21,067 nt of DNA, from positions 1-21,067 of the forward strand of contig NIVC01005211.1 in NCBI GenBank assembly GCA_002269645.1, given 5' to 3'. Positions 2,416 through 21,067 of the stretch are shown in pieces; the stretch's first letter is position 1; every line of letters starts with the position of its first letter. The position numbers were made by a program, and so were the translations under genes. Under the pieces are notes generated by a model. That model had not been told where the DNA came from. It did no database searches and worked only from the letters and a program-made list of their open reading frames with translations. The stretch comes from Macrostomum lignano. Taxonomy: Eukaryota.

Positions 2416-2428
2416 TGGTGAGCCCGAC
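2416..2428 (+). promoter_or_regulatory. Primer-binding site of element A, tRNA-Trp-like (TGGTGAGCCCGAC)
   Basis: Starts 1 nt after the LTR. One mismatch to the recalled complement of the metazoan tRNA-Trp 3' end (TGGTGACCCCGAC). Confidence 0.75.
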
Positions 2429-2461
2429 TCTCAACCGCCTGTTTGAGAATAACTCCTCAGT

Positions 2462-3154: not shown

Positions 3155-3171
3155 ACGTTTCGACGGCCGGC
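3127..3171 (+). promoter_or_regulatory. -1 programmed ribosomal frameshift signal (gag-pol) of element A
   Basis: Slippery G GGA AAC at 3127-3133 in the gag frame, a 6-nt spacer, then a perfect 10-bp stem (3140-3149 with 3162-3171). The protease is encoded in the -1 frame. Confidence 0.88.
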
Positions 3172-6100
3172 AGCAACAACCTCCTGCTCATCCCCGACGT
3201 AGCCACGGGCCGGCGCTTCTTGGTCGACACCGGCGCTGAGGTGAGCATTTTTCCTGTCTCGGGGGCAGACGCCCGCTCGCATACACCCGGCCCGCCGCTT
3301 TTCGCGGCCAACGGCAGCCCGATCCGCACGTTCGGCAGCCGGACACTGACGCTCGACCTCGGCGTCAAGGCCTGCACCTGGCCGTTCATCCTGGCCGAGG
3401 TGTCACGGCCGTTGATCGGCGCGGACTTCCTGCGGCACCACGGCCTACTGGTGGACATGCCGAACCGCCGTCTGCTCGACACTAGCTCGCTGTCCAGCGC
3501 CCACCTGCTGCTCGGGTCCGGCCCGGCACCTCAGCTCGCCGCCGCCGTCGCTGGGACCCGTACAGCCAGCTGCTCGCGGAGTTCCCGTCGCTGACGGAGC
3601 CGAGTTTCCAGAAAGCCCGGCCGCTCCACGGGGTCCAACATCATATTCCTACGACGGGCCCCCCTGTCCACGCCCGGGCGCGCCGCCTGCCGCCTGACAA
3701 GCTGGCGGTGGCCAAGGAGGAATTCCGCAACCTGGAGCAGCTGGGCATCGTGCGGCGGTCCTGCAGCCCCTGGTCGTCGCCGCTGCACATGGTGCCAAAG
3801 GCCTCCGGGGGTTGGCGGCCCTGCGGCGATTTCCGGCGGCTCAACGACGCCACGGTGCCCGACCGCTACCCGGTGCCGCACATTCAGGACTTTTCTGCGC
3901 GGCGGTCCGGGTGCAACATTTTCTCCAAGATCGACCTGGTGCGGGGCTACCACCAGATCCCGGTTGCCGAGGCCGACATCGCCAAGACGGCCGTCATCAC
4001 GCCATTCGGCCTGTTCGAGTTTCTCCGGATGCCATTCGGACTCAAAAACGCCGCCCAGGCCTTCCAACGGCTGATTGACACGGTCTGTCAGGGCTTGGAC
4101 TTCGTGTTCGCCTATATCGACGACTTCCTAGTGGCGAGCAGCGGCCCTCAGCAGCATCTGGAGCACCTGCGCACGCTGTTCCAGCGCCTGGCAGACAACG
4201 GCCTCCTCATCAATCCAGCCAAGTGCCAGTTTGGCCGCAGCGAAATCGACTTTCTAGGCCACCTCATCAACAGCCGGGGCGCCATGCCGCTGCCAGACAA
4301 AGTCGAAGCCATCGCCCGATTCGCTCCGCCCGCGACCTTCAAGGGCCTGCAAGAGTTCGCCGGCATGGTGAACTTCTATCACCGGTTCGTGCCGCGGGCC
4401 GCCCAGTTGCTGCGCCCCATCTACGGCGCCCTGGCCAGCAAGGACAAGATCGTTCAGTGGACACCGGAGCTGACGGACGCCTTCAACAGCACGAAGCAGG
4501 CCCTGGTTGACGCGACCATGCTTGCGCACCCGGAGCCCGACGCCCCAACGGCGCTGACGGTCGACGCCTCGGACACCGCCATCGGGGCGGTTCTGGAGCA
4601 GCGTGTCGGCGAGACCTGGCGGCCACTCGCTTTCTTCAGCCGCCAACTGCGGCCGGCTGAACAAAAGTACAGCGCTTTCGACCGGGAGTTACTCGCTCTC
4701 TATCTGGCCACGCGGCATTTCCGCTACTTTTTGGAAGGCCGCATCTTCACCGCCTACACCGACCACAAACCCCTGGTCGCGGCCATGGCCAAGTTGTCGG
4801 ATCCCTGGTCAGCGCGCCAGCAGCGGCACCTCGCATACGTGTCGGAGTTCACCACCGACATCCGGCACGTGGCAGGCAAGGACAATCCGGTGGCCGACGC
4901 CCTGTCCCGCTGCACCGTCACCTCTGTGCAGCCGCTGCTCCCCGGCATCGACTACGCGGCCCTGGCACGCGCGCAGCTAGTGGACGATCCCGCGCTCGCC
5001 GGCACCGGCCTGCGGCTCGAGCGCGTGATGTTGCGTCCCGGCCTGGAGGTCATCTGCGACACCGTGACCGGCCGCCCGCGCCCGCTGGTGCCCACCGACT
5101 TCCGCCGCGCCGTTTTCGACGCAGTCCACGGCCTGGCGCACCCGTCCGTACGCAGTACGCGGCGCCTGGTGTCCGAGAAGTTCGTGTGGCCGGGAATCAA
5201 CAGGGACGTCGGCCAATGGGCTCGCAGCTGCATCGCCTGCCAGACGGCCAAGGTGCAGCGCCACGTGACCGCCCCGCCCGCCAGCATCCCGGTGCCCAGC
5301 AGCCGTTTCGCGCACGTCCACATCGACCTTGTCGGACCGCTGCCGCAGTCCCGCGGCTTCACGCACCTGCTGACCGTAGTCGACAGGTTCTCCCGCTGGC
5401 CGGAAGCTTTCCCCTTGGCCGACACTTCCGCTGCCTCCTGCGCGTCCGCTTTCATCGCCGGTTGGATCGCCCGCTTCGGCGTGCCCAGTGACGTCACGTC
5501 CGACCGCGGCTCCCAGTTCACCTCCGGGCTATGGGCCAACGTGTCGCGGCTGCTGGGCGTGCAGCTGCACCACACCACCGCTTTTCACCCACAGGCTAAC
5601 GGCCTGGTGGAACGCTTCCACCGCCAGCTCAAGGCATCCCTGATGGCGCGCCTGACCGGACCGACTTGGACCGACGAGCTGCCCTGGGCGTTGCTCGGCA
5701 TCCGCACGGCTCCCAAGGAGGACATCGGCGCCTCCTCGGCCGAGCTGGTCTACGGCGCCCCGCTGACGGTACCGGGAGAATGCCTGCAGGCCGCGCCACC
5801 GAGGGCTCTTACGACCAGTTCCTGGCCCGGTTACGCAGCGCGGTGCAGTCGTTCCGGCCGCCTCCAACCTCGCGACATGGCCGCGTCGCTGCCTACGTGC
5901 CTGCTGCCCTGGAGTCCTGCACGCACGTCTTCATCCGCCGCGACGGCCACCGGCCATCTCTGCAGCGGCCGTACTTCGGGCCCTTCCAGGTCCTTGAGCG
6001 CGGCGACAAGACCTTCCGCCTCGACCTGGGCACGCGGCAGGATCACGTGGCAGTGGACAGACTCAAGCCTGCGGCGCTCGATCCCGGCGAGGCGATTCCG

Positions 6101-6313
6101 GCTCCGGCTCTGCGGCCACGAGGCCGCCCCCGCCTGGACGGCCGGCCACAACTGCCACGTGGTGGAGACCCTCCGGTCGCAGCTGCGCACCCGCAAGCGC
6201 CACCGGGGCTCCCACCAACGCGCCTCCCACCGGTGCAAGCGACCCGGCCTCCAGCGTCTGGTCGCCGCCAGCTTCCGCCTCGCCGGTGCCGCCCGACGCG
6301 GTTTCGGTCCTAG
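3127..6313 (+). CDS. pol: Pol of element A (protease-RT-RNaseH-integrase with GPY/F), interrupted by two 1-nt frameshifts (~3553-3555 and ~5781-5800)
   Basis: LVDTGAEVS (DTG at 3226-3234), YIDD (4113-4124), RNase H TVDASD...AFDRELL, HHCC zinc finger, and integrase core [23 protein letters not shown]. The C-terminal [10 protein letters not shown]...VDRLKPA is in the frame of ORF 5666-6313, which stops at 6311-6313. Confidence 0.92.
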
Positions 6314-6322
6314 GCCAGCGCT

Positions 6323-6330
6323 GGGGGGAG
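6323..6330 (+). promoter_or_regulatory. Polypurine tract of element A
   Basis: GGGGGGAG, 3 nt before the 3' LTR. Confidence 0.85.
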
Positions 6331-6333
6331 CCA

Positions 6334-6536
6334 TGTGGCGGTCACGCCACACGCGCGTACGCGCTCCAGCAGCCACCCCAACCCCGGCCGGGGTCAGGCC
6401 GGCGCTATGTGCACGGTCGCTGTGCGTTGATTGGCTGCCCAGTGTACACCGCTGGCCTATATAACTTTAGACTTTTGTCTCGCGCGCCTTCACCCTGCTA
6501 CTTCCAAATAAACTTTACGTGGCTCAACTCGCCACA
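6334..6536 (+). repeat. 3' LTR of element A (203 bp)
   Basis: Direct repeat of 2212-2414 (202/203 identical). Confidence 0.97.
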
Positions 6537-6697: not shown

Positions 6698-7109
6698 GGG
6701 TGCACGACAATTTGACTGCCACAATTTGACTGCCGACAAAATGACTGCGAACAAAATGACTGCGGTCAAAATGACTGCCGACAATTTGACTGCGGACAAA
6801 ATGACTGCCGACAAAATGACTGCCGACAATTTGACTGCCAACAAAATGACTGCCGACAAAATGACTGCCAACAAAATGACTGCCGACAATATGACTGCGG
6901 CAATTTGACTGCCAGCAAAATGACTGCGGCAATTTAACTGCCGAGCAATATGACTGCGGCAATTTGACTGCCAGCAATATGACTGCGGACAATTTGACTG
7001 CCGAGCAATATGACTGCGGCAATTTGACTGCGGTCAATTTGACTGCGGACAATTTGACTGCCGAGCAATTTGACTGCCAGCGAAATGACTGCCGAGCAAT
7101 TTGACTGCC
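6698..7109 (+). repeat. Left inverted arm: about 27 copies of a ~15-bp unit (ACAAAATGACTGCCG / ACAATTTGACTGCGG)
   Basis: The tandem array is visible directly. Confidence 0.93.
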
Positions 7110-7596: not shown

Positions 7597-8004
7597 GGTT
7601 CAAAGGATGCAAGGAACATTGGGATCGAGAGGCAGAAGTAGAGGCCAGAGTTTTTCTGACATTCTGCGCCGCACCCCAGCCAACAATATCAATAGTTTGC
7701 CTCCAATCCTAATTTTACACGAATGTAATCTATGTTACAGTATGTTTAACTCTAATAATAAAAGTTTTTGCTTGAGTTTAACTTCAGATTTTAGAATATA
7801 TGCAAAATACGAGAGTAGTTCCTAAGATTGGAATTCCCATTTCCCACTGTTCAAAATCCGCGGGTTTCAACAGCTGTTACAGCTTGTTGTATAAAGGTTA
7901 TGTGTTCTGTTCTGCATCATTCTAGCTCGTAAATACAATATTTCACTACATGCATAGACTTAAAAGGGTTGACAGAGTGCTAAACTTTAGGAGCATCATT
8001 TTTC

Positions 8005-8384
8005 CGGCAGTCATTTCGCTGGCAGTCAAATTGCTCGGCAGTCAAATTGTCCGCAGTCAAATTGACCGCAGTCAAATTTCCGCAGTCATTTTGTCGGCAG
8101 TCAAATTGCCGCAGTCATATTGTCGGCAGTCAAATTTCCGCAGTCATTTTGTCGGCAGTCATTTTGTTGGCAGTCATTTTGTCGGCAGTCATTTTGTCCG
8201 CAGTCAAATTGTCGGCAGTCATTTTGTCCGCAGTCATTTTGTTCGCAGTCATTTTGTCCGCAGTCATTTTGTTCGCAGTCATTTTGTCGGCAGTCAAATT
8301 GCTCGGCAGTCAAATTGTCGGCAGTCAAATTGACCGCAGTCAAATTGTGGCAGTCAAATTGTGGCAGTCAATTGTCGTAGACCC
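8005..8384 (-). repeat. Right inverted arm: about 25 copies of the reverse complement of the same ~15-bp unit
   Basis: CGGCAGTCATTTTGT-type units. The innermost ~75 bp mirror 7021-7094. Confidence 0.93.
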
Positions 8385-10195: not shown

Positions 10196-10963
10196 TGTAC
10201 TAGTGTTATGCCTTTATCATAGTATACTCGAATGTTCTTTCAATGTAATAACTGTATATTCGAATCTTTCTTAGAAACTGAATCTACGCGAACGCCAAAT
10301 AATAGTTTGTTTTAATGCGCGAAATAAATTGGAGAATTATTTTTTGTTTTAATCGTATGTGGGGAAAATCACTATATATAGGAGCGGTTTTGCGACAAAT
10401 ATACTCTAACTGTCTTTTACTCGTGAGCAAATAATTGCGAACAGAATAAGCAGTTCAATCTAAACCATTTCAAAGTCTTTGAGCTAAATAGCGACTTATT
10501 TATTTGCAAAACCTGTGAAACGATTCTAAGAAATTTGCTAAGAGAAGGGAATTGGGACTAATTCTTGGAGATATACCAAGAGAGGCGCCGTGACCCTCTA
10601 GTCTCGGTGAACGCCCGATTAGGACTATACACTAATACATATACCAGTACTAGACCGCTCAGGCCATAAGCTACTAGAACGCTACCAGAAAGCAAGCCAT
10701 AAGCTACCAGAAACGCTACTAAGAACGCTACCAGAAACGCTACTAAGAACGCTACCCAGAAATATTTAAATGAAATTCTAAGAAATAGTTAGGGAGTAAA
10801 AGCAAGTATAATCAGGATAACTGTAGTTGGCAAATCGGTGGGATTAAAATTGATAAAGTAAGAGGTGAAAGGCCTGTAACAACTTTGGTAGCAGCTCGTA
10901 GGATATTTAATAAACACTAATAGTTAGAAGTTTAGAAAGACAGAGCCAAAAAGACCTGTCACA
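10196..10963 (+). repeat. 5' LTR of element B (768 bp)
   Basis: Differs from 18129-18899 by T10206/C18139 and one 3-bp (TAA) indel. TATA-like TATATATAGG at 10373-10382 and AATAAA at 10909-10914. Internal AACGCTACCAGAA-type repeats at ~10677-10760. Confidence 0.96.
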
Positions 10964-10965
10964 GC

Positions 10966-10976
10966 TGGTGGCAGCG
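10966..10976 (+). promoter_or_regulatory. Primer-binding site of element B, tRNA-Leu(AAG/TAG)-type (TGGTGGCAGCG)
   Basis: Starts 2 nt after the LTR end. 11-nt match to the recalled complement of the metazoan tRNA-Leu(AAG) 3' end (TGGTGGCAGCGGTGGGATT). Confidence 0.85.
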
Positions 10977-11064
10977 ATAAGGATTAGAGAAACGGCGCGA
11001 ACTCTTAAAGCTAGATTCAGAAGAATTCCGAAGAATAATTTGAAAAGTTTTTCGTAGAGAAAAG

Positions 11065-12069
11065 ATGAATCAGAATCAGGCTAATGACGCCATCGCCATG
11101 CTGGCAGAAGAATTGCGAAACCGACTAGAGATAGGGCCGATGAGACACGTTAAGATTCAGAAATTCACACCTACGCAAGACATTCGGATCTGGCTAACAG
11201 CCTTCGATCAGCGCTGTGAAGTAGAAGGGATAGATGAGGAACATAGGAAGCAGGAATTGCTAGCTAATCTGGACCTGTCCACTGCATTCGCAGCGGTACA
11301 GCGCCTAAATCTGCCCGAGGATCTTGAATACGAAGAGTTCAAAGAGCGACTGATTGAGCGATTCGGAAGAATCGGTAGTTCCGCAGAATTCAGAGAGGAG
11401 TTTCGTGGAAGAATGCAAGGCAGAAATGAGCCTGTAGAGACTTTCGCAGACTGTTTGATCGAGCTGGCATCGCGTGCATTTCCGAATATGACGGTTGAGC
11501 AAAGGGAAGAAGAAATTGTTGAGCAATTCATCAAGGGAATCAGAATTCCGTCAGAGACCCGTGAGAAGCTAATCTTTGCGCAGCCAGGCAATTTACAAGA
11601 GGCTAGAAGAATGCTAAGAAGGATGGAGGCTGCGTGGAACATGTCTCACAAGAATGTCAACATGAGAATGGCCAAAGGCGAAGGCGAGAGTGAGCAGAAG
11701 GCAGATCAGGAGAAGCTTGAGGACATCATCAAGAAGCAGAGAGCAGAGTTAGAGCAACAGAAGAAGGCGATTGAGGAGCTGATGGAAGAGAAGAGAGCTA
11801 GCCGTCAGCAGTATCATCCGCAGAATCAATATCAAACGTACGCTCAGGTCGCTGGACCGCCGCAGCAGCCGAGATATCGGCCGCAGCAGCAGCAGCAGCA
11901 GCAGCCAGTATGGCGCGGTCAGCCTCAGTTCAACAGGCAGCCACAGCAACAGCAGCAGCCTCGAGCCTGCTACAATTGCGGGAAGCTTGGCCACATGGCG
12001 AGGAATTGCCAGAGCGCTAGGCCAAACGGTCAGCGAGTGATGAACTACCAGAAGCAGCAGGGAAACTGA
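11065..12069 (+). CDS. gag: Gag of element B (334 aa)
   Basis: Capsid-like QG.NE.VETFA.CL.ELA region, a coiled coil, a Q/P-rich linker and a CCHC knuckle CYNCGKLGHMARNC at 11968-12009. Confidence 0.92.
   Translation: MNQNQANDAIAMLAEELRNRLEIGPMRHVKIQKFTPTQDIRIWLTAFDQRCEVEGIDEEHRKQELLANLDLSTAFAAVQRLNLPEDLEYEEFKERLIERFGRIGSSAEFREEFRGRMQGRNEPVETFADCLIELASRAFPNMTVEQREEEIVEQFIKGIRIPSETREKLIFAQPGNLQEARRMLRRMEAAWNMSHKNVNMRMAKGEGESEQKADQEKLEDIIKKQRAELEQQKKAIEELMEEKRASRQQYHPQNQYQTYAQVAGPPQQPRYRPQQQQQQQPVWRGQPQFNRQPQQQQQPRACYNCGKLGHMARNCQSARPNGQRVMNYQKQQGN
12060..12066 (+). promoter_or_regulatory. -1 frameshift slippery site of element B (G GGA AAC, immediately before the gag TGA)
   Basis: The -1 frame is open from 12060 through the protease DTG at 12429-12437. 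Possible downstream pseudoknot: AGCG/CGCT (12072-12084) plus GAGGG/CCCTC (12075-12103). Confidence 0.82.
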
Positions 12070-15000
12070 GTAGCGAGGGCCGCTTTGCGAGGCCACGTCC
12101 CTCTAGCAACAATTATCGCGAATTTCAGGCCTCTGAATTTGTAAATAATGCGTATCGAAGTAATGCCAGACAGTATAGTAACAGCAGAACGCATGCCGAA
12201 TTCAATAAATTTCACAGAAAACCAAATAAAAATTTTGCACCTCGTGTACATACGCCGCTTGCACCTAGTCATGCGTCTGCCAGCCACAGTAGGCCGAATA
12301 ATAAAGTACAAAGTACAGTAATTCCGAATGAGCATTCGAAGAAAGAATTCGAAGAAGATACGGAGAGAAAAGGACGAGAAGCAGTCGTCAATGGAATGCT
12401 AAGAAACCGAAAGGTCTACTTCCTGCTAGACACAGGAGCTGGACATAATTTCCTAAGCAAGAGTACTTGGAAAAAGATGTTCAGAAGTGATGAAATTGAG
12501 TTGACTACTAGAAGAGTGACTACGTTTGACGGATCAAGTGTGCGAATTGAAGGAGAAGTCAGAACGAAAATACGATTCGGAGAGATAGAGATTAGACAGA
12601 GTTCCTGCTGTGCAATCACGAGTGTGACGACATACTCGGGATGGAGTTCTTCATGAACTTCTGCGACAGCATCAGCCTTTCCAGAGGAATGCTTGTATTA
12701 AAAGAAGGGACCTGCATCCCAATTCAGTTTACAAAATTACCCGTACGGGTTTGCCGAATCTACAGCCATAACAGCGTGACTATACCAGCGAATAGCGCTC
12801 TTCGAATTCCAATTAGAATGACTAAAGGATCAGAAGCTAACTATGGAACGCCAATGGTCATTGACACCATTGGAGGCCAAGTGACTACGAAGAAAATTCC
12901 TTAGAGATGATTCCTACTCTAGTGACCATGAACGATGGAACAGGAGTAGTGGAAATAATCAATCGACAGAATGACGATATCAGACTGACAAGATCTACGC
13001 TGATTGGAGTGGCCAAACCCTTGAAGCCAGGAGGCCTGGCCTACTCTATTAACAGCAAAGGTCAAGCCAGTTCAGATGATGCAATTAGGACAGTGAAGAG
13101 TGAAGAGAGTGAGTACAGCTGGATAAACGAGATCGATTTAGGAGAAGAGCTAACATCAGAACAGAAAGGACTAGTGATCGATTTGCTAAAGAAGAACAAA
13201 GAAGCGTTTTCGCAGACCAGCCAAGACATGGGTCTCACCCATCTTGTGACTCATGAAATATCTCTAAAAGATACCACACCAGTCAGGATTCCAACACGCA
13301 GAATTCCACCACATCTGCAAAAGCAAGTAGATGAGCAACTTGACGACATGCTTGCTAAGAACCTGATCCGACCGTGCTATAGTACTTATTCGACGCCGCT
13401 AGTGATAGTTCCTAAGAAGGATGGATCCATAAGAATCGTCAGTGACTTCAGGGTCCTGAACTCGAGAGTGAACTATTACCCATATCCATTGCCGAACATA
13501 CAAGAGACTTTCGCTCAGTTATCTGGAAGCAAGTACTTCAGTAGTCTAGATTTAAACTCTGGATACTGGCAGGTACCTATCAAAGAAGAGCACAAATTTA
13601 TGACAGCCTTTTCCACCCTTACCAGAGGCCAGTTCGAATATCAGGTCATGGCACAGGGCTTGTCTAACGCTCCTGGTACATTCCAGAGACTCATGAATTT
13701 GGTGCTGATGGGAATACAGCACAAATTCGCAATGTCGTACATAGATGATATTGTGACATACTCAGAGAAATTCGAAGATCATCTCGGTCATCTGCAAGAA
13801 GTATTTCAAAGACTAATCTCAGCAGGACTAAAATTAAGACCAAAAAAGTGCAACTTGTTTCAGAAAGAGCTAAAGTACTTAGGGCATATCGTAGGAAGAG
13901 AAGGGATTAGAACAGACCCAGCTAAGATCGAAGCGATACAGTCATGGCCTACGCCGAAAGAGGTCAAAGAACTGCGAAGCTTCTTGGGGTTGTGTAACTA
14001 CTACTGCAGATTTGTAAAGAATTACGCAGAGGCAGCGCATCCGCTATTTCAATTAACTAAGAAAGGTATTCAAAACTTTAGGGAAAAGTGGACCAAGAAG
14101 CATGACGAGGCTTTCCAGCAGTTGAAGCAGAGAATGACATCGACCGAAGTACTCGCGTACCCAGAATTCTCAGAGAACGAAAATGTTCGAATGGTATTAG
14201 ACACCGACGCAAGCGAAGACCGAATTGGTGCTTGCCTGGGTCAAATACAATCGGACGGGGTTGAAAGACCCATTGCTTACTTCAGCAGAGCAATGAAAGA
14301 GTCTGAGAAAAGATATCCGATTACCAGAAAAGAGCTATTAGCGCTAGTAGATGGCATGAAACACTTCCGATTTTACCTAATTGGCAAAAGGTTTCTGGCC
14401 CGCACAGACCACAAGGCAATTCTATGGTTACTGCGCCAGACCGAAGCCCAAGGAATTCTCGGAAGATGGATTGAAAGACTGAGTGAGTTTCAATACGATA
14501 TTGAGCACCGCAGTGGAGCCAAACATTCCAACGCAGATGGATTGTCACGGCGACCCTCGAACCACCAGTTGAACAGAAAGATGCTAAGATCAAAGAGAAT
14601 GAGGCCGAAATTCCTAAGATGACAATAGAAACCAGCGCTGTGAAACAAGTCGTGACTAACAGCGTGAAAGATCAGAGTTGCCAGACCGACTTCACAGAAG
14701 ATTATGAATCAGATTCCGAAGACGAATTCGCAGATGATGAATACGAGGATGCCAGTGATCAGTTCGAAGATGATGATGACATCTATGAAGATGCAAGAGA
14801 CTATTTCGAAGAGGAAGAGACAGTGTGCAGAAAGCTTCTGACAGATTACCTCTCGGTTCCATTGAAGAAAGAGCAGCTGACTTCAGCGCAGCATGCTGAT
14901 CCTTCTATAAGAACCTTGATGGACTGGAAGCAGAAGAAAGTGCGTGAGCCGAAGTTGCCAGAAAATGCATCCGGAGAGTTGAAGAAGATGGTTAAGTTCT

Positions 15001-16567
15001 ACGAGCAGATGAAAATCGAAGATGAAATGCTGACAGTCAGTGAAGACGGTAAACGAAAGTAGTATTGCCAGAGAAGGATTGAGAAAGATGTATTCAAAGA
15101 GCTGCATGACAGTCCGCTAGCAGGCCACCTAGGTCGGGACAAGACGCTACAGCGAGTCCGAGACCGATTCTGGAGGCCGGGGTTAGTGACTGCAGTTGAA
15201 AAGTACATCGCAGAATGCATCCCGTGTCTGGAAAGTAAAAGCGGAAATAAAGTACGAGCACCGGTGCAGACCTTTCCGATATGTGAGCCATTCCATCGGC
15301 TGCACATAGATTTGATCGGTCCAATATCAAAGGAAAGCAGAAGAGGACACCGATATGTACTTACTGTCGTAGATAGTACAACAAAGTTCCCATTCGCTTT
15401 TCCGGTTCGGAATCAGAAATCCGCGACTGTTATCAAAACGATACAAGAGAGAATTTTCAGCGAGTATGGCCAGTGTCAATGGATACACACTGATAATGGC
15501 AAGACTTTTGTAAGTCACCAATTTCAGGCATTCTGTACCCTATACGGCATTAAGCATACTTGCACTACGCCTTACCATGCTCAGAGTAACGGGCTTGTCG
15601 AAAGATTTAACAAGCAAATTAAATCGATTGTAACCTGTTTGATTGAAAAGGATCATTCAGATTGGGATCTGCTCATACCCGCCGCTTTGGTAGCTGTGCG
15701 AACCAGTGTTAATCAAACTACTGGGTTCACACCACACTACTTACTATTCGGGAGAGAAGCAGATTTGCCAATAGATAGCATTGTGAAAAGGCCAAGACTA
15801 TACCGAGACTATCCTAGCTATGTGCTGGATCATGCGAAGAGAATCGAGGAGACAAAAGCAATTGTGCGAAGACAACTCGAAAAGGTGCGAGAGAAAAGGC
15901 AAGAGGACGAAGTTGAGAATCGTCAGCCTAAAAATGTGCCAGTTGGCTGTCTCGCTCTCATCAACAACCTCAACTTCACCAAGAGGAGAGCCACAAATTT
16001 CATCGAAAGAAAAGAGCAGCCTATCGAGTTCTTGCGAAGATATCTGATACAGTTTTCCGTGTGCAAAGAGAAATCAATGGCGAAAGGAGCGGAGAAAAAC
16101 TATTAGTACATAGAAATAATCTGACTCCAGTGCCGAAATCCGAAATTGATTTACCAGAGGAAATTAATAATAATTTAAAACCAGCACCAGTGCCAACTAA
16201 GAAGAAAGAACAGCCGAAGCCGAAGAAAAGAATTTGCCATAGACAAAAAGAAGTTAGAATTCCAGAAGTTCAAATTTTAGAGGAGGAAAGCTCAGACGAA
16301 GAAAACAGAATTCAATGGAGAGTATTCGCAGATCCGAATTCGCAGAGTGAAAACGAAGGAAATGAAGAATTGAACAGTGAGAATACAGAGAGAGCGACTG
16401 ACTCAGATGAGCCATCAGAAGAAGAAGAAGGAGCATTAGAGTTAGAGGAGGAACGAGTTCAGCCAGAGAATAGGTATAACTTTAGGATGACTCAGCGAAG
16501 GAGAGAAAGAGAAGGCGCGACAGGATTTGTGCCCCGAAGGCGCTACGCGAAATATTTAGCACCTTAA
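12060..16567 (+). CDS. pol: Pol of element B (PR-RT-RH-INT), broken into ORF-track pieces by about six small frameshifts
   Basis: LLDTGAG, YIDD (13738-13749), RNase H LDTDASE...TRKELL and ELHDSPLAGH...CIPC zinc finger. Integrase core HIDLIGP/HTDNG/NGLVERFN and a degenerate GPY/F (KRAAYRVL...VHRNNL). Breaks at ~12599, 12893-12896, ~14559, 15056-15077 (compensating pair) and ~15981-15990. Confidence 0.9.
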
Positions 16568-16817
16568 ATCATGACGTAAGCAATTTCCCATAAGAAACAG
16601 TGTTAAATAGTTAAAATTCCGTATTAGAATTACTTATCTGCTTATAAAATTTGACATGCTGTACATAGAGCGAATCTGTAAATACCATATTAATCTACAA
16701 AATGCGATCTTTAATTTGATACTTTACTCAAGAAAATCTATCAAAAAATAAAAAAGTTATAAAAAGAAATAGAAAATCCATAAAAATTTAGTTGTCAAAT
16801 CTGTCAAATCTGGCATG

Positions 16818-16883
16818 CCCCGCCCCACGCGCGAGGGAGTGCTTCGAAGAGGTCCAGTTTTTCGGCCCGCCAGCCTATAAATA
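16818..16883 (+). promoter_or_regulatory. Candidate internal promoter for ORF3
   Basis: GC box CCCCGCCCC (16818-16826) and TATAAATA (16876-16883) in a GC-rich island after an AT-rich stretch with AATAAA (16747-16752). The start context is CAAAATG. Confidence 0.5.
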
Positions 16884-16966
16884 CGAGCACCCTGCAGGCC
16901 CCACAGATCCCATAGCTCACTGCTAGCTTCCTTTCTATTCTAAGAGCCATTCGCAGAGAAATCAAA

Positions 16967-17842
16967 ATGAACAACTCTATTGACATCTTGGACGAGTTAA
17001 TTGGCAATCTGTCAGACGATATGGAGCCCCAGCCAGCGCCCAACACCGACGAAAATGAGGCACCGCTTCGATGTGCAACACGTCCAAAGGCGCCTGGTGT
17101 ATCCAGCAAACGGCCAAGAACATCATCGCCAGCTTCATCGCCTTGCCGCCAAATGAGGGTCGAAGGCCCCGAGCAGAAGCGCGCCGCCCTGGTGGCAGCA
17201 CAGGCAGCTGCGCCCGTGCGCTCCTATGTTGTCAAGGCCACGCCAGGATCGTCGACATCAAGCCGAACGCAGCAGTTGGTGTCACCGCCAGCTGCCCCAT
17301 CATCGAGAAAGACCCCGGCACCACGGCAGAAGAAATCGACAGCTGCGACACCGCCAGCTCAGCAGCCAGCGTCGCAGCCGAGCCTGCAATCAGCGCAGCA
17401 GTCAGCGCTGCAGCCGAGCCTGCAATCAGCGCAGCAGTCTAGCCAGCCATCAGCACTACAGCCGAGCCAGCAGCAATCGAATTCGCAGAGAGATTTTCAT
17501 CGCATCGTCCGAGAACTTGTGGAGACTCGCGGAGCAGAGGTGGAAAAGCTACGCTTCCACATTGAGCAATACGCACTGAAAGTAGCGTACCACCGATCCG
17601 ACAGCCGACAGCGCTACCCCCAATGCTCGCAAATTTGGACACACCTGAAGTTTCTAAGGGATCAATTCAGTTACCAGGAAGCTGTCGCTGTTCTCCAGGA
17701 CGTCGCCTATCGCCTCCAGCGAGCTATAAGAGCCAACCCGCCGCCAGCGCTGACGGTCCTCGACGAAGAGTACCGATGGTTTTTCGCTCAAGTCGGCTGG
17801 CCCTACTATCGCGACCTCCCGGAGCCCTGCATGTTTATCTGA
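16967..17842 (+). CDS. ORF3 of element B: 291-aa protein of unknown function (not env-like)
   Basis: Uninterrupted ORF between pol and the PPT. Acidic N-terminus, S/P/Q-rich low-complexity middle with basic patches, and a ~115-aa helical-looking C-terminal region. No signal peptide or transmembrane stretch is visible. Confidence 0.8.
   Translation: MNNSIDILDELIGNLSDDMEPQPAPNTDENEAPLRCATRPKAPGVSSKRPRTSSPASSPCRQMRVEGPEQKRAALVAAQAAAPVRSYVVKATPGSSTSSRTQQLVSPPAAPSSRKTPAPRQKKSTAATPPAQQPASQPSLQSAQQSALQPSLQSAQQSSQPSALQPSQQQSNSQRDFHRIVRELVETRGAEVEKLRFHIEQYALKVAYHRSDSRQRYPQCSQIWTHLKFLRDQFSYQEAVAVLQDVAYRLQRAIRANPPPALTVLDEEYRWFFAQVGWPYYRDLPEPCMFI
17374..17439 (+). repeat. In-frame 36-bp-period duplication in ORF3 (QPSLQSAQQS twice)
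   Basis: Identical 30-mers at 17374-17403 and 17410-17439. Confidence 0.9.
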
Positions 17843-18115
17843 ACTATTGAGGTGAACTAACTTTTGCGTTGCCTTTAATAACAATTTTGCCTTTTATAAT
17901 ACTTTTATAATAGTTCGTTTTGCTTCCATAATAGTTCTCACTTTAATGGTTTACCTACATAATAGTTCTATCACAACCATTTTATGCACCAATTGTTTTA
18001 GCACTGAATTGTGTTTTCTGCACCTTGCTTTGCACCTTTTCACCTGCATTTTCCTACGATATCAATTTTTCACTGTATACATATAATATAGTATTTCGTT
18101 CAAAATTTGATATAT

Positions 18116-18127
18116 AGAGGAGGAAAG
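18116..18127 (+). promoter_or_regulatory. Polypurine tract of element B
   Basis: AGAGGAGGAAAG, 1 nt before the 3' LTR. Confidence 0.88.
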
Positions 18128-18128
18128 T

Positions 18129-18899
18129 TGTACTAGTGCTATGCCTTTATCATAGTATACTCGAATGTTCTTTCAATGTAATAACTGTATATTCGAATCT
18201 TTCTTAGAAACTGAATCTACGCGAACGCCAAATAATAGTTTGTTTTAATGCGCGAAATAAATTGGAGAATTATTTTTTGTTTTAATCGTATGTGGGGAAA
18301 ATCACTATATATAGGAGCGGTTTTGCGACAAATATACTCTAACTGTCTTTTACTCGTGAGCAAATAATTGCGAACAGAATAAGCAGTTCAATCTAAACCA
18401 TTTCAAAGTCTTTGAGCTAAATAGCGACTTATTTATTTGCAAAACCTGTGAAACGATTCTAAGAAATTTGCTAAGAGAAGGGAATTGGGACTAATTCTTG
18501 GAGATATACCAAGAGAGGCGCCGTGACCCTCTAGTCTCGGTGAACGCCCGATTAGGACTATACACTAATACATATACCAGTACTAGACCGCTCAGGCCAT
18601 AAGCTACTAGAACGCTACCAGAAAGCAAGCCATAAGCTACCAGAAACGCTACTAAGAACGCTACCAGAAACGCTACTAAGAACGCTACCCAGAAATATTT
18701 AAATGAAATTCTAAGAAATAGTTAGGGAGTAAAAGCAAGTATAATCAGGATAACTGTAGTTGGCAAATCGGTGGGATTAAAATTGATAAAGTAAGAGGTG
18801 AAAGGCCTGTAACAACTTTGGTAGCAGCTCGTAGGATATTTAATAAACACTAATAATAGTTAGAAGTTTAGAAAGACAGAGCCAAAAAGACCTGTCACA
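18129..18899 (+). repeat. 3' LTR of element B (771 bp)
   Basis: Direct repeat of 10196-10963. Confidence 0.96.
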
Positions 18900-19560
18900 T
18901 TTATAGTATAATAAAAGTTTTTTAATTCTTGGCATGGCCTAACCTGCTAACCATTAGTCTAGGCTTATGTTGTTATCAATTTTTTATTCAGCTTTAGTTT
19001 AATTAATAAGGCCAAGAAATCAAAATAATTGTCTATTAGACTAGGCCTATTAAATTTAAATAGTTTTTGGCTTTAAATCAAAATTAGAAGTTTGGAAATT
19101 GGATATTGATAAATGGTTCAAAGTAAAATAATAAAAGCAAAATACAACTTGAATACCTTATATTTTGAGGCTCTATTCTCTATTCAATAAAAAATTATAA
19201 CCTTATTATTTGCTCTAGGCCTATTTGCTTTAATCCATATTTTCAAAGATCATTTAAGTAGTCTACTGAGCCTTAGGAGCCACCAAAGTAGTCTGCTTAG
19301 AATCAAAGGCTATCACTCATTAGCTAGCTAGAGCAATCTACTAAGCCTTAGAAGCCATTAAAATAATCTATTAAGCTCCAAGTCCATTGATATTATTAGT
19401 GCAACATATCATTTTCATAGATATTCCAATATATTTTTCAAGTGCTATGCCTAGTGATTCAACAAATGTGAACATGTTAAATGCCTACTTAAATCTGCAT
19501 GTTCAATGCCTGCTTTATAAAGTTTTTGGGTCATTTTAAAGCATAGGCTTTTATACACGA

Positions 19561-19611
19561 TATATAGTATACTGTATAATACACTTATACACTATATATT
19601 TATACACTATA
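19561..19611. repeat. Degenerate (TATACAC)n microsatellite, left half, split by the solo LTR
   Basis: The same TATACACTATATA motifs resume at 20499. Confidence 0.75.
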
Positions 19612-20498
19612 TGTAACAGGGGTTTGCTTCCCTCTTTAGCTATCCCACTGCTGGTACCAAATTGTAACAGTGGTTATTGTTCTCTCTATTTAAATCTCTA
19701 CTGCTGACACCAAAGTTGTTACAAGGCTAACTTCCTACACTAATCTTTAATTGTTCTTGTTAAGTTGGTAGCTGCCACCAGGATTATTCCATTAATAAAT
19801 TATGAGTTTATCAATCTTAGAATAATCCGATAAATGTTTCTTAGAATAGGTCTGAGTATTTAGTCTGAGTATTTGGTCTGAGTATTTATTCTGAGTATTT
19901 AGTCTGAGTATTATTCTTAGAAAACTGTTAGCCCTGAAAGATTTTACTCCTCTGTTATTCTGGTAGCGTTTCTGTTATTCTGGTAGCGTTCTACTTAATA
20001 ATTAGGCCTAAGTGGTATTTTGGCTTACTGGTATATGTATTTCATGTACTTTGCAAGTCCTTGGGCATTACCGAGATCAGAGGGTCACAGCCTCTGGTTA
20101 TCTTACACGTATCACTTCAGATCTACTTTGTATTCTCTTACTACTCAATACTACTGCTTCTCAATAGTATGTACTATATACGCTTCAGTCAATTTCACTC
20201 TTACTTCGTAAAAGGAATTAACACAGAAAACACTTCTTCAATTCTTATTTTCTCGAACTCTTACTATTCGCTATCAATTACTTATTGCAGAACCGCGATG
20301 CACGAGGTTGGTCTCTCCTCCACTGAAATTGCTTCTATTTATACTAAAATTTGCTACAGTTTTAAACAAAAATTCGTTAGCGCAAAATATTATAGAAAAT
20401 ACAAGTATTAAAACAAAATATGTTTCTTAGTTTTTGGCGTGAATTCAAATTGACTAAATGGTGACTATTTTATAAAGAAATCGGGAGGGCCCTGCACA
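19612..20498 (-). mobile_element. Solo LTR (887 bp) of a family related to, but diverged from, element B
   Basis: TG...CA ends and a 4-bp TSD TATA (19608-19611 and 20499-20502). The reverse complement shares blocks with the B LTR (GTGACCCTCT..TCTCGGT, ATACATATACCAGTA, TAGAACGCTACCAGAA, TGTAACAACTTTGGT) and ends CCTGTTACA versus B's CCTGTCACA. Confidence 0.85.
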
Positions 20499-20557
20499 TA
20501 TACACTATGTACTATATACACTATATACTATACACTATATATTTATACACTATATAT
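20499..20557. repeat. Degenerate (TATACAC)n microsatellite, right half
   Basis: Continuation of 19561-19611. Confidence 0.75.
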
Positions 20558-21067
20558 TGCCTTGCTCATGTTTGTCTAAATGAAAAGCTTGCTTGTCTTT
20601 TTGATTTAAGACTTGCCACGCAATGCAAAATGCTTTCTGACAAGCCACACAATCACATTGAAAAAGCTCAAGGTGTCACTTCTCAAGAAGTTTGGAGTCC
20701 TGTAGTCTATTCTCAACTGACTCTAGAATAGTTTCAGAGAGGCAAAGTCTAGCACATTTGTTATCAAACTTTGCTTTGATAAAAACAAGAGAAAAATATG
20801 CAAAAAGTAGAAAAGAGGAGAAACTTGCATTTAGTGATCAAAAAGAAATAAATTGAAATATTTTAGGTCAGAGAGAGAATAAATTTTAATTGCATGTGAA
20901 GCAGAGCTATGTTGCACTAGCCAGGTAAAAATCAGTTGCACATACGGTAGTGTGTCAATAGTTCACACATTATGTCTGATGTTTGTAGTTCCTCACATTA
21001 ATGCAGTTTGTAAATTTTCAGTTAGTGCAAGCCACTTCAATTAGTCAGCCATGTCGACATCTCAGAA

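What the first reader, a model, noticed from the sequence alone, without database searches (positions are those of the whole stretch)
19612..19790. Solo LTR ends in a polarised array of relic 'LTR end + PBS' units whose PBSs resemble different tRNA-Leu isoacceptors
Seen on the minus strand, from inside to the LTR end: TGGTGGCAGC (19780-19771), a unique spacer, CCTTGTAACA-actt-TGGTGTCAGCAGTAGAGATT (19726-19693), a unique spacer, CTGTTACA-att-TGGTACCAGCAGTGGGAT (19670-19642), a unique spacer, and the true end CCTGTTACA (19620-19612). The end motifs are 51 and 54 bp apart, and the innermost unit has lost its end motif. Known: metazoan tRNA-Leu 3' ends complement TGGTGGCAG (AAG/TAG), TGGTGTCAG (CAG/CAA) and TGGTACCAG (TAA), recalled from vertebrate and insect sequences, and reverse transcription can rewrite a PBS to the primer actually used. 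The units differ mainly at the two positions where those isoacceptors differ. Inference: the LTR grew stepwise by priming at a new downstream PBS, absorbing the old end, PBS and a piece of leader each time. That leaves an ordered repeat-spacer record of primer usage, or a standing set of alternative primer sites that lets the element follow the Leu-tRNA pool of different tissues. Duplicated PBSs may have been noted in some Gypsy lineages; I cannot confirm prior description.
Basis: partly seen in the sequence, partly recalled or inferred. Interest (0 to 1): 0.85.

Follow-up and report, generated by a model that had tools for sequence, protein, structure and literature searches.

The report
Relic primer sites stacked in LTR
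The outer end of this flatworm retrotransposon LTR is a stack of old 'LTR tip plus tRNA-Leu primer site' modules. This suggests that in this lineage the LTR boundary shifts as a new primer site takes over, which could be one route by which such elements change their tRNA primer.

Summary
The 887-bp solo LTR (19612-20498, minus strand) belongs to a Ty3/Gypsy family of Macrostomum lignano or a close relative. It ends in three PBS-like sites at the stated coordinates, two of them preceded by an LTR-tip motif, far above chance.

- **Same window:** a full-length relative (10196-18899) carries one inner unit in both LTRs. Its true tip plus PBS aligns with the solo LTR's middle unit.
- **Second M. 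lignano family:** it is polymorphic. One copy (TSD GCTG) has an extra tip+PBS unit inside both LTRs. Other copies end at that inner tip (TSD CTAC in L001).
- **Another relative:** four units in tandem upstream of gag.
- **tRNA type:** the sites are tRNA-Leu type. Two match the mouse Leu(AAG/UAG) 3' end over 19-20 nt. Unit C is the exact complement of real tRNA-Leu(UAA/CAA) genes. Unit B is nearest Leu(CAA).

Best reading: the U5-tail/tip+PBS module gets duplicated or recombined in, the downstream copy takes over priming, and older copies are carried into the LTR and decay.

Weak points: spacer homology is weak, host tRNAs could not be reached, gain versus loss is unpolarised, and the innermost core is oddly conserved. 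I rate it a new variant of a known kind, of moderate interest.

The parts
19612..20498 (-). Solo LTR (887 bp) of a Ty3/Gypsy family related to the full-length element in this window
   Evidence: Termini TGTGCAGGG.../...CCCCTGTTACA, no internal sequence on either side. Homologous to the LTRs at 10196-10963 and 18129-18899.
19612..19620 (-). True 3' tip of the solo LTR, CCTGTTACA. The PBS that followed it was lost with the internal region.
19642..19670 (-). Unit C: tip motif CTGTTACA, linker ATT, 18-nt PBS-like TGGTACCAGCAGTGGGAT (tRNA-Leu, UAA-type acceptor)
   Evidence: It is the exact complement of the 3' end of 7 ARAGORN-called tRNA-Leu genes, 5 UAA and 2 CAA.
19693..19726 (-). Unit B: tip motif CCTTGTAACA (one extra T), linker ACTT, PBS-like TGGTGTCAGCAGTAGAGATT (nearest Leu(CAA) type, slightly decayed)
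   Evidence: It aligns with the true LTR end plus PBS of the full-length element.
19761..19780 (-). Unit A: TGGTGGCAGC followed by unrelated bases, with no tip motif. The first 10 nt match the Leu(AAG/UAG) type. The same core is conserved in related families.
19746..19751 (-). ATTAAA, the only poly(A)-signal-like hexamer in the last 250 nt of the solo LTR, lying between units A and B
   Evidence: The R/U5 inference drawn from it is not tested.
20499..20502 (-). Candidate target-site duplication TATA (upstream copy)
   Evidence: Low-complexity context, so weak.
19608..19611 (-). Candidate target-site duplication TATA (downstream copy)
10196..18899 (+). Full-length related Ty3/Gypsy element (8704 bp), TSD TTTA, LTRs 99.5% identical
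10196..10963 (+). 5' LTR (768 bp), TGTACTAG...CCTGTCACA
18129..18899 (+). 3' LTR (771 bp)
10873..10905 (+). Inner unit in the 5' LTR: CCTGTAACA-ACTT-TGGTAGCAGCTCGTAGGATA (decayed Leu(AAG)-type PBS). AATAAA follows at 10909.
18806..18838 (+). The same inner unit in the 3' LTR
10827..10845 (+). Possible still older PBS relic, TTGGCAAATCGGTGGGATT. Its last 10 nt equal positions 10-19 of the Leu(AAG) probe.
   Evidence: Weak: the count of GTGGGAT is not above chance, only its location is suggestive.
10955..10963 (+). True LTR tip CCTGTCACA of the full-length element
10966..10983 (+). PBS position of the full-length element, TGGTGGCAGCGATAAGGA. The first 11 nt are complementary to the tRNA-Leu(AAG/UAG) 3' end.
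11065..12069 (+). gag (334 aa, open, CCHC knuckle), 93% identical to a M. lignano UniRef protein
12387..16106 (+). pol (PR-RT-RNase H-IN), broken: 3 frame changes and 1 in-frame stop relative to the open pol of L006
   Evidence: Some breaks could be assembly indels, because the LTRs are 99.5% identical.
16967..17842 (+). Third ORF (291 aa) with no Pfam match
18116..18127 (+). Polypurine tract AGAGGAGGAAAG

Best explanation
**What it is.** The last ~170 nt of this solo LTR are a diverged head-to-tail array of one functional module of a Ty3/Gypsy retrotransposon. Each module has four pieces:
- a U5 tail
- the LTR tip that integrase recognises (CCTGTNACA)
- a 2-4-nt linker
- a tRNA-Leu primer-binding site

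**How it most likely forms** (steps 1, 3 and 4 are inferred; step 2 follows from the textbook reverse-transcription scheme and matches what L006 shows):
1. In this Macrostomum lineage the module at the U5/leader border is repeatedly duplicated, or brought in from a co-packaged relative by template switching of reverse transcriptase. An RNA then carries two or more tip+PBS modules in a row.
2. The PBS on which the tRNA primes minus-strand synthesis defines where U5, and so the LTR, ends. If the downstream module primes, everything upstream of it, including the old tip and old PBS, is copied into both LTRs of the daughter copy.
3. Internalised modules are no longer needed and decay. This gives the inside-old, outside-young gradient.
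4. Modules can also be lost again between the short repeats at their borders.

**Consequence.** A spare PBS is free to be rewritten by, or to drift towards, another tRNA. The array can therefore carry sites for different tRNA-Leu isoacceptors. In the solo LTR these are AAG/UAG-type (A), CAA-like (B) and UAA-type (C). The array may be the intermediate through which such elements change primer.
For: **Shown directly**
- The motifs are far above chance and confined to LTR 3' parts.
- The solo LTR is homologous to the LTR of the full-length element. That element's true tip and PBS align to solo unit B, and its inner unit aligns to solo unit A. The solo LTR is therefore two modules longer.
- The inner unit is present in both LTRs of the full-length element.
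- The related M. lignano family has both forms:
  - L006 has 64 extra bases in both LTRs. They comprise TGGTGGCAGCGGTGGGATTC, a spacer and a new tip ...TATTTCA. Its TSD is GCTG.
  - L001 and L007 (both LTRs seen) and L008 and L009 (one LTR seen) end at the inner tip ...TGTACTTCA, followed directly by the same downstream PBS. L001 has TSD CTAC.
  - The junction repeat TTCAC|TGGTG sits on both sides of the extra unit.
- The L006 unit-ii U5 tail resembles the family's U5 tail: p=0.002 against L001 and p=0.02 against its own unit i, with the terminal TTCAC excluded. A composite model of leader start plus U5 tail gives p~0.03.
- L002, a relative with gag 63% identical, has four tip+PBS units in tandem just upstream of gag.
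- L010 has a 31-nt tandem repeat that starts inside its PBS, so this border is duplication-prone.
- There is a decay gradient in the solo LTR and in the full-length LTR.

**tRNA identity**
- The L005 PBS and the L006 inner unit match the mouse tRNA-Leu(AAG; also UAG) probe complement over 19-20 nt.
- The PBS of the full-length element matches its first 11 nt.
- Unit C differs from the AAG type at exactly 3 positions, all diagnostic for the UAA-type acceptor. By my calculation the chance under random decay is 4/22032, about 2e-4.
- A pattern built only from unit C found 21 metagenome matches. Seven are ARAGORN tRNA genes and all seven are tRNA-Leu, 5 UAA and 2 CAA.

**Established knowledge**
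- The PBS plus-strand copy is templated by the tRNA.
- Priming from a downstream PBS extends the LTR. This was engineered in two-PBS vectors (Voronin and Pathak, J Virol 2004). I saw only the title, as reference 39 of PMC3902901; the content is from my own knowledge.
Against: - Spacers B and C of the solo LTR are not demonstrably homologous to each other, to the leader of the full-length element or to its inner spacer (p=0.15-0.9). In the window itself, duplication is inferred only from the repeated tip+linker+PBS.
- Gain versus loss of the L006 unit is not polarised. L006 is the only long copy among seven sampled.
- No host tRNA gene could be obtained. ARAGORN found none in the window or in about 150 kb of M. 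lignano loci. All tRNA comparators are from mouse or from unknown metagenomic organisms.
- Units B and C both have C at PBS position 10, where the mouse CAA and UAA types have A and G.
- The four L002 units are each 3-4 changes from the AAG type, which fits decay of one ancestral PBS. The LTR boundary of L002 is unknown.
- The PBS next to the LTR in the L001 family (TGGTGAC[G/T]CAGCGGTG...) matches no comparator.
- The innermost core CTGGTGGCAGC(A)C..TACC is among the best conserved blocks of the LTR 3' region across subfamilies, 27/28 in L010. It probably lies in R, upstream of the only poly(A) signal. That fits a working element better than a relic tip+PBS.
Confidence: 0.6

Rival explanations
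1. Standing set of alternative working primer sites. All or several units are kept functional, and different tRNA-Leu species prime at different units in different cycles or tissues, so LTR length flips back and forth.
For: - The L006 inner unit is a perfect 20-nt Leu(AAG/UAG) complement, and solo unit C is a perfect tRNA-Leu complement with an intact tip.
- Intact-looking units fold into a U5-tail:PBS hairpin, while decayed ones do not: z=-2.7 for unit C, -1.8 for L005 and -1.9 for L006 ii.
- The innermost 10-12-nt core is conserved across families.
- Short and long LTR forms coexist.
Against: [quoted passage not shown]
- L006's LTRs are 99.9% identical, so its perfect inner PBS may simply be young.
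- There is no evidence on actual primer use or on tissue tRNA pools.
Confidence: 0.15
2. An ordinary tandem duplication of a ~50-65-bp stretch at the U5/leader border, followed by neutral decay. The different 'isoacceptor' looks are accidents of mutation, and the array has no bearing on primer choice.
For: - Units B and C are 68% identical overall.
- All PBS-like sites in the lineage lie within edit distance 3-4 of the Leu(AAG) type, against 8 for an unrelated PBS.
- The L002 units fit decay.
- LTRs here carry other tandem repeats with 12-, 13- and 20-nt periods.
- L010 shows a plain tandem repeat at the PBS.
Against: - All three differences of unit C from the AAG type hit isoacceptor-diagnostic positions with the diagnostic base (about 2e-4). 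The resulting 15-mer plus acceptor partner exists in real tRNA-Leu genes.
- Conservation is concentrated in tip, linker and PBS, while the spacers are randomised.
- The LTR boundary itself differs between copies by exactly one unit. Such a duplication therefore changes where the LTR ends, which is the accretion model.
Confidence: 0.15
3. The innermost TGGTGGCAGC core, and perhaps other inner units, is a selected cis-element in R/U5 and not a relic. Possibilities are an auxiliary 10-11-nt docking site for the tRNA-Leu 3' end, present at both RNA ends if it lies in R, or a decoy for 3'-tRNA fragments that target PBSs.
For: - The core is conserved over 27-28 of 28 nt between diverged subfamilies, while the flanks diverge.
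- The same core occurs in solo unit A, in L004 and in the L001 family.
- It lies just upstream of the only poly(A) signal in both window LTRs.
- Drosophila Gypsy works with an 11-nt PBS and has a second tRNA-binding site (PMC1635307).
- 3'-tRFs repress LTR elements through the PBS (abstract of bioRxiv 10.64898/2026.01.22.698655).
Against: - This does not explain the tip motifs in front of units B and C, or the one-unit LTR length polymorphism.
- The aligned unit of the full-length element has the core mutated to TGGTAGCAGC.
- No complementary partner or binding data are available.
Confidence: 0.09
4. Chance resemblance in AT-rich, repeat-rich DNA.
For: The window is rich in low-complexity and tandem repeats.
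Against: - The motif counts are 7 against 0.68 expected and 4 against 0.02 expected, with 0 of 100 shuffles reaching them.
- The same architecture appears in four independent relatives.
Confidence: 0.01

Closest known systems
Engineered retroviral vectors with two primer-binding sites (Voronin and Pathak, J Virol 2004;78:5402; title seen as reference 39 of PMC3902901; content from my own knowledge, paper not held)
   Same: There are two PBSs in tandem downstream of U5. Which one primes decides whether the stretch between them ends up inside both LTRs. L006 against L001 is the natural counterpart of that outcome.
   Different: Here the arrangement is natural and recurrent in a retrotransposon lineage, with up to four units. 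Each unit brings its own integrase-type LTR tip, and the PBSs differ in sequence (tRNA-Leu subtypes).
Bipartite or second tRNA-binding sites of Ty3 and Drosophila Gypsy (PMC1635307)
   Same: There is more than one site on the genomic RNA that can pair with the primer tRNA. Short PBSs of 11 nt are sufficient in a Gypsy element.
   Different: In Gypsy and Ty3 the second site lies near the 3' end of the RNA and pairs with a different part of the same tRNA (anticodon and T stems). Here all sites are complementary to the same 3' acceptor end, sit head to tail next to the 5' PBS, and carry LTR tips.
PBS rewriting and primer switching in retroviruses and LTR retrotransposons (HIV-1 forced-primer work, e.g. 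PMC1084362, listed; tapeworm Saci2 families with varied PBSs including tRNA-Leu(AAG), PMC12471100; 'the detailed mechanism is unknown', PMC10886601)
   Same: Related families use different tRNAs. The PBS is copied from the tRNA actually used, so it can change.
   Different: Those cases describe replacement at a single PBS. Here old and new sites are kept side by side, which offers a visible intermediate and an ordered record.
Tandem repeats in LTRs and 5' UTRs of LTR retrotransposons
   Same: This is a head-to-tail repeat of a 50-66-nt unit near the U5/leader border. Other short tandem repeats are present in the same LTRs.
   Different: The repeated unit is the functional tip+PBS module. Conservation is limited to those functional parts, and the repeat number changes the position of the LTR boundary.
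Helenus / Cassandra-type LTRs that contain tRNA- or 5S-derived sequence (PMC10886601)
   Same: There is tRNA-related sequence inside an LTR.
   Different: Those LTRs carry sense-strand small-RNA gene copies with pol III promoters, unrelated to the element's PBS. Here the LTR carries antisense 10-20-nt complements of tRNA 3' ends, i.e. former PBSs. Rfam and ARAGORN find no tRNA here.

Membership tests
Ty3/Gypsy LTR retrotransposon (the full-length element that anchors the solo LTR) | gag with CCHC knuckle and pol in the order PR-RT-RNase H-IN | tested here: met
   Pfam: zf-CCHC, Asp_protease_2, RVT_1, RT_RNaseH, rve, in that order. pol is broken by 3 frame changes and 1 stop.
Ty3/Gypsy LTR retrotransposon (the full-length element that anchors the solo LTR) | Direct LTRs with TG...CA termini, a 4-6-bp TSD and a PPT before the 3' LTR | tested here: met
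   LTRs 10196-10963 and 18129-18899 are 99.5% identical, TGTAC...GTCACA, with TSD TTTA and PPT AGAGGAGGAAAG.
Ty3/Gypsy LTR retrotransposon (the full-length element that anchors the solo LTR) | A PBS within a few nt of the 5' LTR, complementary to a tRNA 3' end | tested here: met
   TGGTGGCAGCG lies 2 nt after the LTR. It is an 11-nt match to the mouse tRNA-Leu(AAG/UAG) probe. The host tRNA was not available.
Ty3/Gypsy LTR retrotransposon (the full-length element that anchors the solo LTR) | Assignment to a named clade (Mag, CsRN1, Gmr1/Osvaldo and others, as used for M. lignano in PMC12801592) | not tested
   No reference RT set was at hand. The best RT hit is a M. lignano protein at 54% identity.
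Solo LTR | Homologous over its length to the LTR of a full-length element, with no internal region attached | tested here: met
   Alignment A1, BLAST block E=7e-7, flanks read.
Solo LTR | Flanked by a target-site duplication | tested here: inconclusive
   TATA is on both sides, but inside a TATAGTGTATA-type low-complexity array with 27-bp identical flanks.
Primer-binding site (for inner units A, B, C) | Begins with TGG 0-5 nt after a CA-ending LTR tip | tested here: met
   Met for B and C. Not met for A, which has no tip.
Primer-binding site (for inner units A, B, C) | Complementary over about 11-18 nt to the 3' end (with CCA) of a tRNA | tested here: met
   - C: exact complement of the last 15 nt of 7 real tRNA-Leu genes. 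These 15 nt are the T loop/stem, the acceptor strand and the discriminator A; with CCA the match would be 18 nt.
- B: edit distance 3 to the mouse Leu(CAA) type, 9-nt uninterrupted match.
- A: 10-nt uninterrupted match to the Leu(AAG) type.
Primer-binding site (for inner units A, B, C) | Lies immediately outside the LTR, i.e. it was the site used in the last replication cycle | tested here: not met
   All three lie inside the LTR, whose end is at 19612. They are former or spare sites, not the one last used.
Primer-binding site (for inner units A, B, C) | Complementary to a tRNA of the host | not testable with these tools
   No tRNA gene was found in the window or in the M. lignano loci fetched. 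The assembly cannot be scanned as a whole here.
Simple tandem repeat | Head-to-tail copies alike along their whole length (TRF threshold about 70%) | tested here: not met
   TRF has no row for 19612-19790. Units B and C are 68% identical overall, and spacer similarity is not significant (p=0.24).
Bipartite PBS of Ty3 / Drosophila Gypsy | The second site pairs with another region of the same tRNA and lies near the RNA 3' end | tested here: not met
   The extra sites here repeat the complement of the acceptor 3' end and lie next to the 5' PBS. Definition taken from PMC1635307.
Two-PBS configuration with LTR extension (known from engineered vectors) | The sequence between the upstream and downstream PBS is present in both LTRs of a copy | tested here: met
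   L006: the 64-bp stretch with the inner PBS is in both LTRs, TSD GCTG. Full-length element: the inner unit is in both LTRs.

The most novel reading that the evidence does not exclude
In this flatworm Gypsy lineage the LTR/leader border works as an evolving cassette array. Tip+PBS modules are added by duplication or by recombination between co-packaged relatives, compete for priming, and are retired into the LTR. Three things would follow:
- The LTR 3' region would be an ordered, readable record of past primer use.
- The array would be the missing intermediate that lets an LTR retrotransposon switch tRNA primer without ever passing through a primer-less state.
- The conserved innermost tRNA-Leu-binding core in R could be an additional working tRNA docking site.
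Probability: 0.3. Interest if true: 0.75.

Novelty: new variant of a known kind. Interest (0 to 1): 0.6.

Why it matters
How LTR retrotransposons and retroviruses change their tRNA primer is acknowledged as mechanistically unknown (PMC10886601). A natural lineage offers a concrete route if old and new tip+PBS modules sit side by side and sister copies differ by exactly one module at the LTR boundary. That route is duplication followed by takeover.

It also shows that an LTR can grow at its U5 end by swallowing former PBSs. This matters for annotation. LTR boundaries, PBS calls and family definitions made by LTRharvest/LTRdigest-type tools would be misled by inner PBSs. It may also matter for dating, because unit order would give a relative timeline.

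The eight literature searches run here found no prior description of such arrays. The M. lignano LTR-retrotransposon survey does not mention PBSs or tRNAs.

Tried and rejected
1. **Spacer homology in the window.** I ran local and semi-global alignments of all spacers against shuffles. Nothing was significant (p=0.08-0.99; p=0.15-0.93). 'Simple tandem duplication' can be neither shown nor excluded there.
2. **Hairpin idea.** The tip pairing with the PBS start holds only for intact-looking units (z -1.3 to -2.7). Decayed units do not show it (z up to +1.4), so it is not a defining feature.
3. **Rfam and ARAGORN.** Rfam at E<=1 on 19400-20700 found no family. ARAGORN found no tRNA in the window.
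4. **Host tRNAs.** ARAGORN on all M. lignano loci fetched found none.
5. **More copies of the window's own families.**
   - The exact-gag look-up found nothing.
   - The gag search gave one M. lignano protein without a contig and three Logan contigs.
   - The gag profile search added only one more.
   - BLAST of both LTRs against all fetched loci found nothing.
6. **Viral-contig scans.** tRNA genes matching the L001-family PBS, unit C or the PBS of the full-length element gave 0 hits each.
7. **Literature searches.**
   - Searching short sequence strings returned only unrelated primer lists.
   - Phrase searches for two, duplicated or tandem PBSs found only prime-editing papers, the Gypsy 5'/3' PBS paper and a brief two-PBS note in an Anopheles Copia cluster.
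   - The Voronin and Pathak paper is not held.
8. **Homology of the L006 spacer to the leader alone.** p=0.095, not used as evidence.
9. **Tissue-specific tRNA-Leu pool idea.** Nothing in the sequence data bears on it.
Full report
**1. What is in the window**

The window is AT-rich, repeat-rich eukaryotic DNA.

*The full-length element.* It holds a full-length LTR retrotransposon on the plus strand at 10196-18899.
- The LTRs are 768 and 771 bp and 99.5% identical (TGTACTAG...CCTGTCACA). The TSD is TTTA and the PPT is AGAGGAGGAAAG.
- TGGTGGCAGCGATAAGGA lies at the PBS position, 2 nt after the 5' LTR.
- The ORFs give gag (CCHC), protease, RT, RNase H and integrase in Ty3/Gypsy order.
- gag is open. 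pol carries 3 frame changes and 1 stop relative to an open relative. With LTRs this similar, some of these may be assembly indels.
- gag is 93% identical to a UniRef protein of Macrostomum lignano. The best RT hit is also M. lignano, at 54%. The host is therefore M. lignano or a very close relative.

- Its termini are TGTGCAGGG and CCCCTGTTACA.
- It has TATA on both sides, but in low-complexity DNA.
- It is homologous to the LTRs of the full-length element, though it belongs to a different family.

**2.

- All strings and coordinates are exact.
- TGGTNNCAGC occurs 7 times against 0.68 expected. CTGTNACA-N2-4-TGGT occurs 4 times against 0.02. CTGTNACA occurs 10 times against 2.07. No shuffle reaches the observed counts.
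- The tips are 54 and 51 nt apart, and the innermost unit lacks a tip.
- TRF does not call the array. Units B and C are 68% identical overall. The identity is concentrated in tip, linker and PBS.

**3. The units are former LTR ends plus PBSs**

The full-length element carries the same kind of unit inside both LTRs: CCTGTAACA-ACTT-TGGTAGCAGCTCGTAGGATA at 10873-10905 and 18806-18838.

In the MAFFT alignment:
- this inner unit falls on solo unit A;
- the element's true tip plus its PBS falls on solo unit B;
- unit C and the final tip of the solo LTR have no counterpart.

Relative to its cousin, the solo LTR is therefore two modules longer at its U5 end.

The only poly(A)-signal hexamers in the 3' parts of the two LTRs lie just after the aligned innermost unit (AATAAA at 10909, ATTAAA at 19751). 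If they are used, U5 is about 20-40 nt in the full-length element and about 105-125 nt in the solo LTR. This is inference and was not tested.

**4. Relatives show the process**

*L001 family.* L001 is a M. lignano element whose RT is 54% identical to the window's.
- Its LTRs end ...CCTGTACTTCA. They are followed by C and TGGTGACGCAGCGGTGAG, with TSD CTAC.
- About 110 nt before the LTR end there is an inner CTGGTGGCAGCACTACC.

*L006.* A second copy, L006, has LTRs 96.7% identical to L001 and 99.9% to each other, open gag and pol ORFs, and TSD GCTG.
- Both of its LTRs read ...CATTGTACTTCA-C-TGGTGGCAGCGGTGGGATTC-spacer-...TATTTCA.
- The same TGGTGACGC site follows the 5' LTR.
- L006 therefore contains inside its LTRs one extra tip+PBS unit.

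*Other copies.* L001 and L007 (both LTRs seen), L008 and L009 (one LTR seen) and the diverged L010 end at that inner tip. L032 is a further subfamily with a very different U5 tail.

It is met in a sister family, not in the window's own families, whose other copies I could not reach.

*Other relatives.*
- L002 is a Logan contig whose gag is 63% identical. It has four units in tandem just upstream of gag. Each is CCCT(G/A)(T/C)A.CA-(A)ATT followed by TGGTG....
- L003 and L005 each show one tip+PBS in the short sequence available.
- L010 has a 31-nt tandem repeat that begins inside its PBS.

The U5/leader border is evidently duplication-prone throughout this lineage.

**5. Duplication or leader capture?**

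*In the window.* Spacer similarities are not significant.

*In L006, the youngest case.*
- The 3' half of the spacer is a diverged copy of the family's U5 tail. With the terminal TTCAC excluded, p=0.002 against L001 and 0.02 against its own unit i; the orthologous control gives 1e-4.
- A composite model of leader start plus U5 tail fits with p about 0.03.
- Similarity to the leader alone gives p=0.095.

The repeated unit is best described as [U5 tail + tip + linker + PBS (+ a little leader)].

The L006 tail copy is diverged although the element is young. In addition, the L006 leader is 99% identical to L007 while its LTR is 96.7% identical. Acquisition by template switching between co-packaged relatives is therefore as plausible as in-place duplication. 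Both routes are inferred.

The short repeat TTCAC|TGGTG at both borders of the unit would also allow loss. The direction of change is not resolved.

**6. Which tRNAs?**

No host tRNA gene was obtainable. The comparators from the tools are the mouse probe sequences printed in PMC7997516:
- Leu(AAG, also used for UAG): TGGTGGCAGCGGTGGGATTCGAACC...
- Leu(CAA): TGGTGTCAGAAGTGGGATTCGAACC...
- Leu(UAA): this probe ends in ...CCATCCTGGT, which gives the acceptor ACCAGGA.

The 18-mer ATCCCACCGCTGCCACCA also turns up in tRNA-fragment papers, two of them on tRF-Leu-AAG.

Results against these comparators:

| Site | Result |
|---|---|
| L005 PBS, L006 inner unit | match the AAG type over 19-20 nt |
| PBS of the full-length element | matches the first 11 nt |
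| Solo unit A | matches the first 10 nt |
| Solo unit B | nearer CAA (edit distance 3, 9-nt lead) than AAG (4, 5-nt lead) |
| Solo unit C | 3 differences from AAG type, all at positions diagnostic for the UAA acceptor |
| L002 units | 3-4 changes from the AAG type, compatible with decay |

- **Unit C.** It differs from the AAG type at exactly three positions, all with the diagnostic base for the UAA acceptor. One diagnostic position (position 10) stays C. Under random decay the chance is 4/22032, about 2e-4 (my calculation).
- **Real genes matching unit C.** A pattern built only from unit C and its implied acceptor partner was ACCAGCA-N60-85-ATCCCACTGCTGGTA. It found 21 metagenome matches. Seven are ARAGORN tRNA genes and all seven are tRNA-Leu, 5 UAA and 2 CAA. 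These genes lie in dense tRNA arrays of unknown organisms, not the host.
- **L001-family PBS.** It looks like the AAG type with G6 replaced by AC(G/T), and it has no comparator.

**7. What does not fit a pure relic model**

The innermost core CTGGTGGCAGC(A)C..TACC shows unusual conservation:
- It is identical over 28 nt in six L001-family copies and 27/28 in the diverged L010, while the flanks diverge.
- It recurs in solo unit A and in L004.
- It probably lies in R.

It may be a working element, for example a 10-11-nt docking site for the tRNA-Leu 3' end. Drosophila Gypsy uses an 11-nt PBS and has a second tRNA-binding site, although of a different kind (PMC1635307). I leave this as a rival or addition, not a conclusion.

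**8. Comparison with what is known**

- **Mechanism.** The closest known system is the engineered two-PBS retroviral vector, in which the priming site decides LTR extent (Voronin and Pathak 2004). I saw only the title; the paper is not held, and the content is from my own knowledge.
- **Not a match.** It is not the bipartite PBS of Ty3 or Gypsy, not a simple tandem repeat, and not a tRNA-gene-bearing LTR of the Helenus type.
- **Prior description.** Eight literature searches found no description of natural tip+PBS arrays inside LTRs. The M. lignano LTR-retrotransposon survey does not mention PBSs or tRNAs.
- **Open question it touches.** Primer switching among related families is known, but its mechanism is stated to be unknown (PMC10886601; PMC12471100).

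**9. Verdict**

- Best explanation (confidence 0.6): accretion of retired tip+PBS modules at the U5 end, after module duplication or recombination and takeover of priming by the downstream copy.
- Status: a new variant of a known kind of element, of moderate interest (0.6).
- What would raise the interest: host tRNA genes confirming distinct isoacceptors, and a copy census showing a nested series of LTR ends.

Noticed in passing
window 2212-6536 (+): A compact Ty3/Gypsy-like element with about 70% GC sits in AT-rich DNA.
- It has identical 203-bp LTRs (2212-2414 and 6334-6536), TSD ATAC and PPT GGGGGGAG.
- A PBS-like TGGTGAGCCCGACTCTCA lies at 2416.
- It has a 918-aa RT-RNase H-integrase ORF (3708-6464).
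- It has no inner PBS-like units.
- The composition contrast with its surroundings is striking.
   Followed up: partly
window 6705-7109 and 7996-8376: Two arrays of 15-bp tandem repeats in inverted orientation (arms up to 208 nt, 91% complementary, about 1.1 kb apart). This is a foldback-like structure directly next to the GC-rich element.
   Followed up: no
window 6-484: A C-rich 31-bp (and 63-bp) tandem array of about 16 copies. A 133-aa ORF on the minus strand runs through it.
   Followed up: no
window 17188-17201 (+): CCTGGTGGCAGCAC lies inside the third ORF of the full-length element. It has the same core as the conserved inner LTR motif of the L001 family. It may be chance, since one such hit is expected.
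   Followed up: partly
window 16967-17842 (+): The third ORF (291 aa, Ser/Pro/Gln/Ala-rich) lies between pol and the 3' LTR. It has no Pfam match and is not env-like by these searches.
   Followed up: partly
window 10827-10845 and 18760-18778 (+): TTGGCAAATCGGTGGGATT lies in both LTRs of the full-length element. Its last 10 nt equal positions 10-19 of the Leu(AAG) probe complement. It may be an even older PBS relic upstream of the inner unit.
   Followed up: partly
window 19586-19612 and 20529-20555: 27-bp identical direct repeats flank the solo LTR. They are part of a TATAGTGTATA-type low-complexity array, and they make the 4-bp TSD call uncertain.
   Followed up: partly
window 10660-10762, 18593-18695, 19850-19912, 19951-19990: Short tandem repeats inside the LTRs. 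The full-length LTR has 12/24/36-nt GCTACCAGAAAC-type repeats. The solo LTR has 13-nt GTCTGAGTATTTA x4.8 and a 20-nt unit x2. The GCTACCAGAA motif is shared by both families.
   Followed up: no
L010:7640-7760: The leader of a diverged M. lignano subfamily has a 31-nt tandem repeat (2 full copies plus a partial one). It starts inside the 3' half of the PBS (TGGGATTCGACGAGTCAACGACACGACTATC).
   Followed up: partly
L006:7500-16565: The long-LTR copy has uninterrupted gag (363-aa ORF) and pol (1616-aa ORF) and 99.9% identical LTRs. It looks like a recent insertion.
   Followed up: partly
L001, L006-L010, L032 (PBS beside the 5' LTR): The PBS of this family, TGGTGAC(G/T)CAGCGGTG(G/A)GAT, reads like the Leu(AAG) complement with G6 replaced by three bases (net +2 nt). 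No tRNA comparator was found for it.
   Followed up: partly
L011, L012, L017, L018, L019, L022, L031: These metagenome contigs carry dense arrays of tRNA genes (up to 8 in about 1.1 kb), including the tRNA-Leu genes that match unit C. The source organisms are unknown.
   Followed up: no
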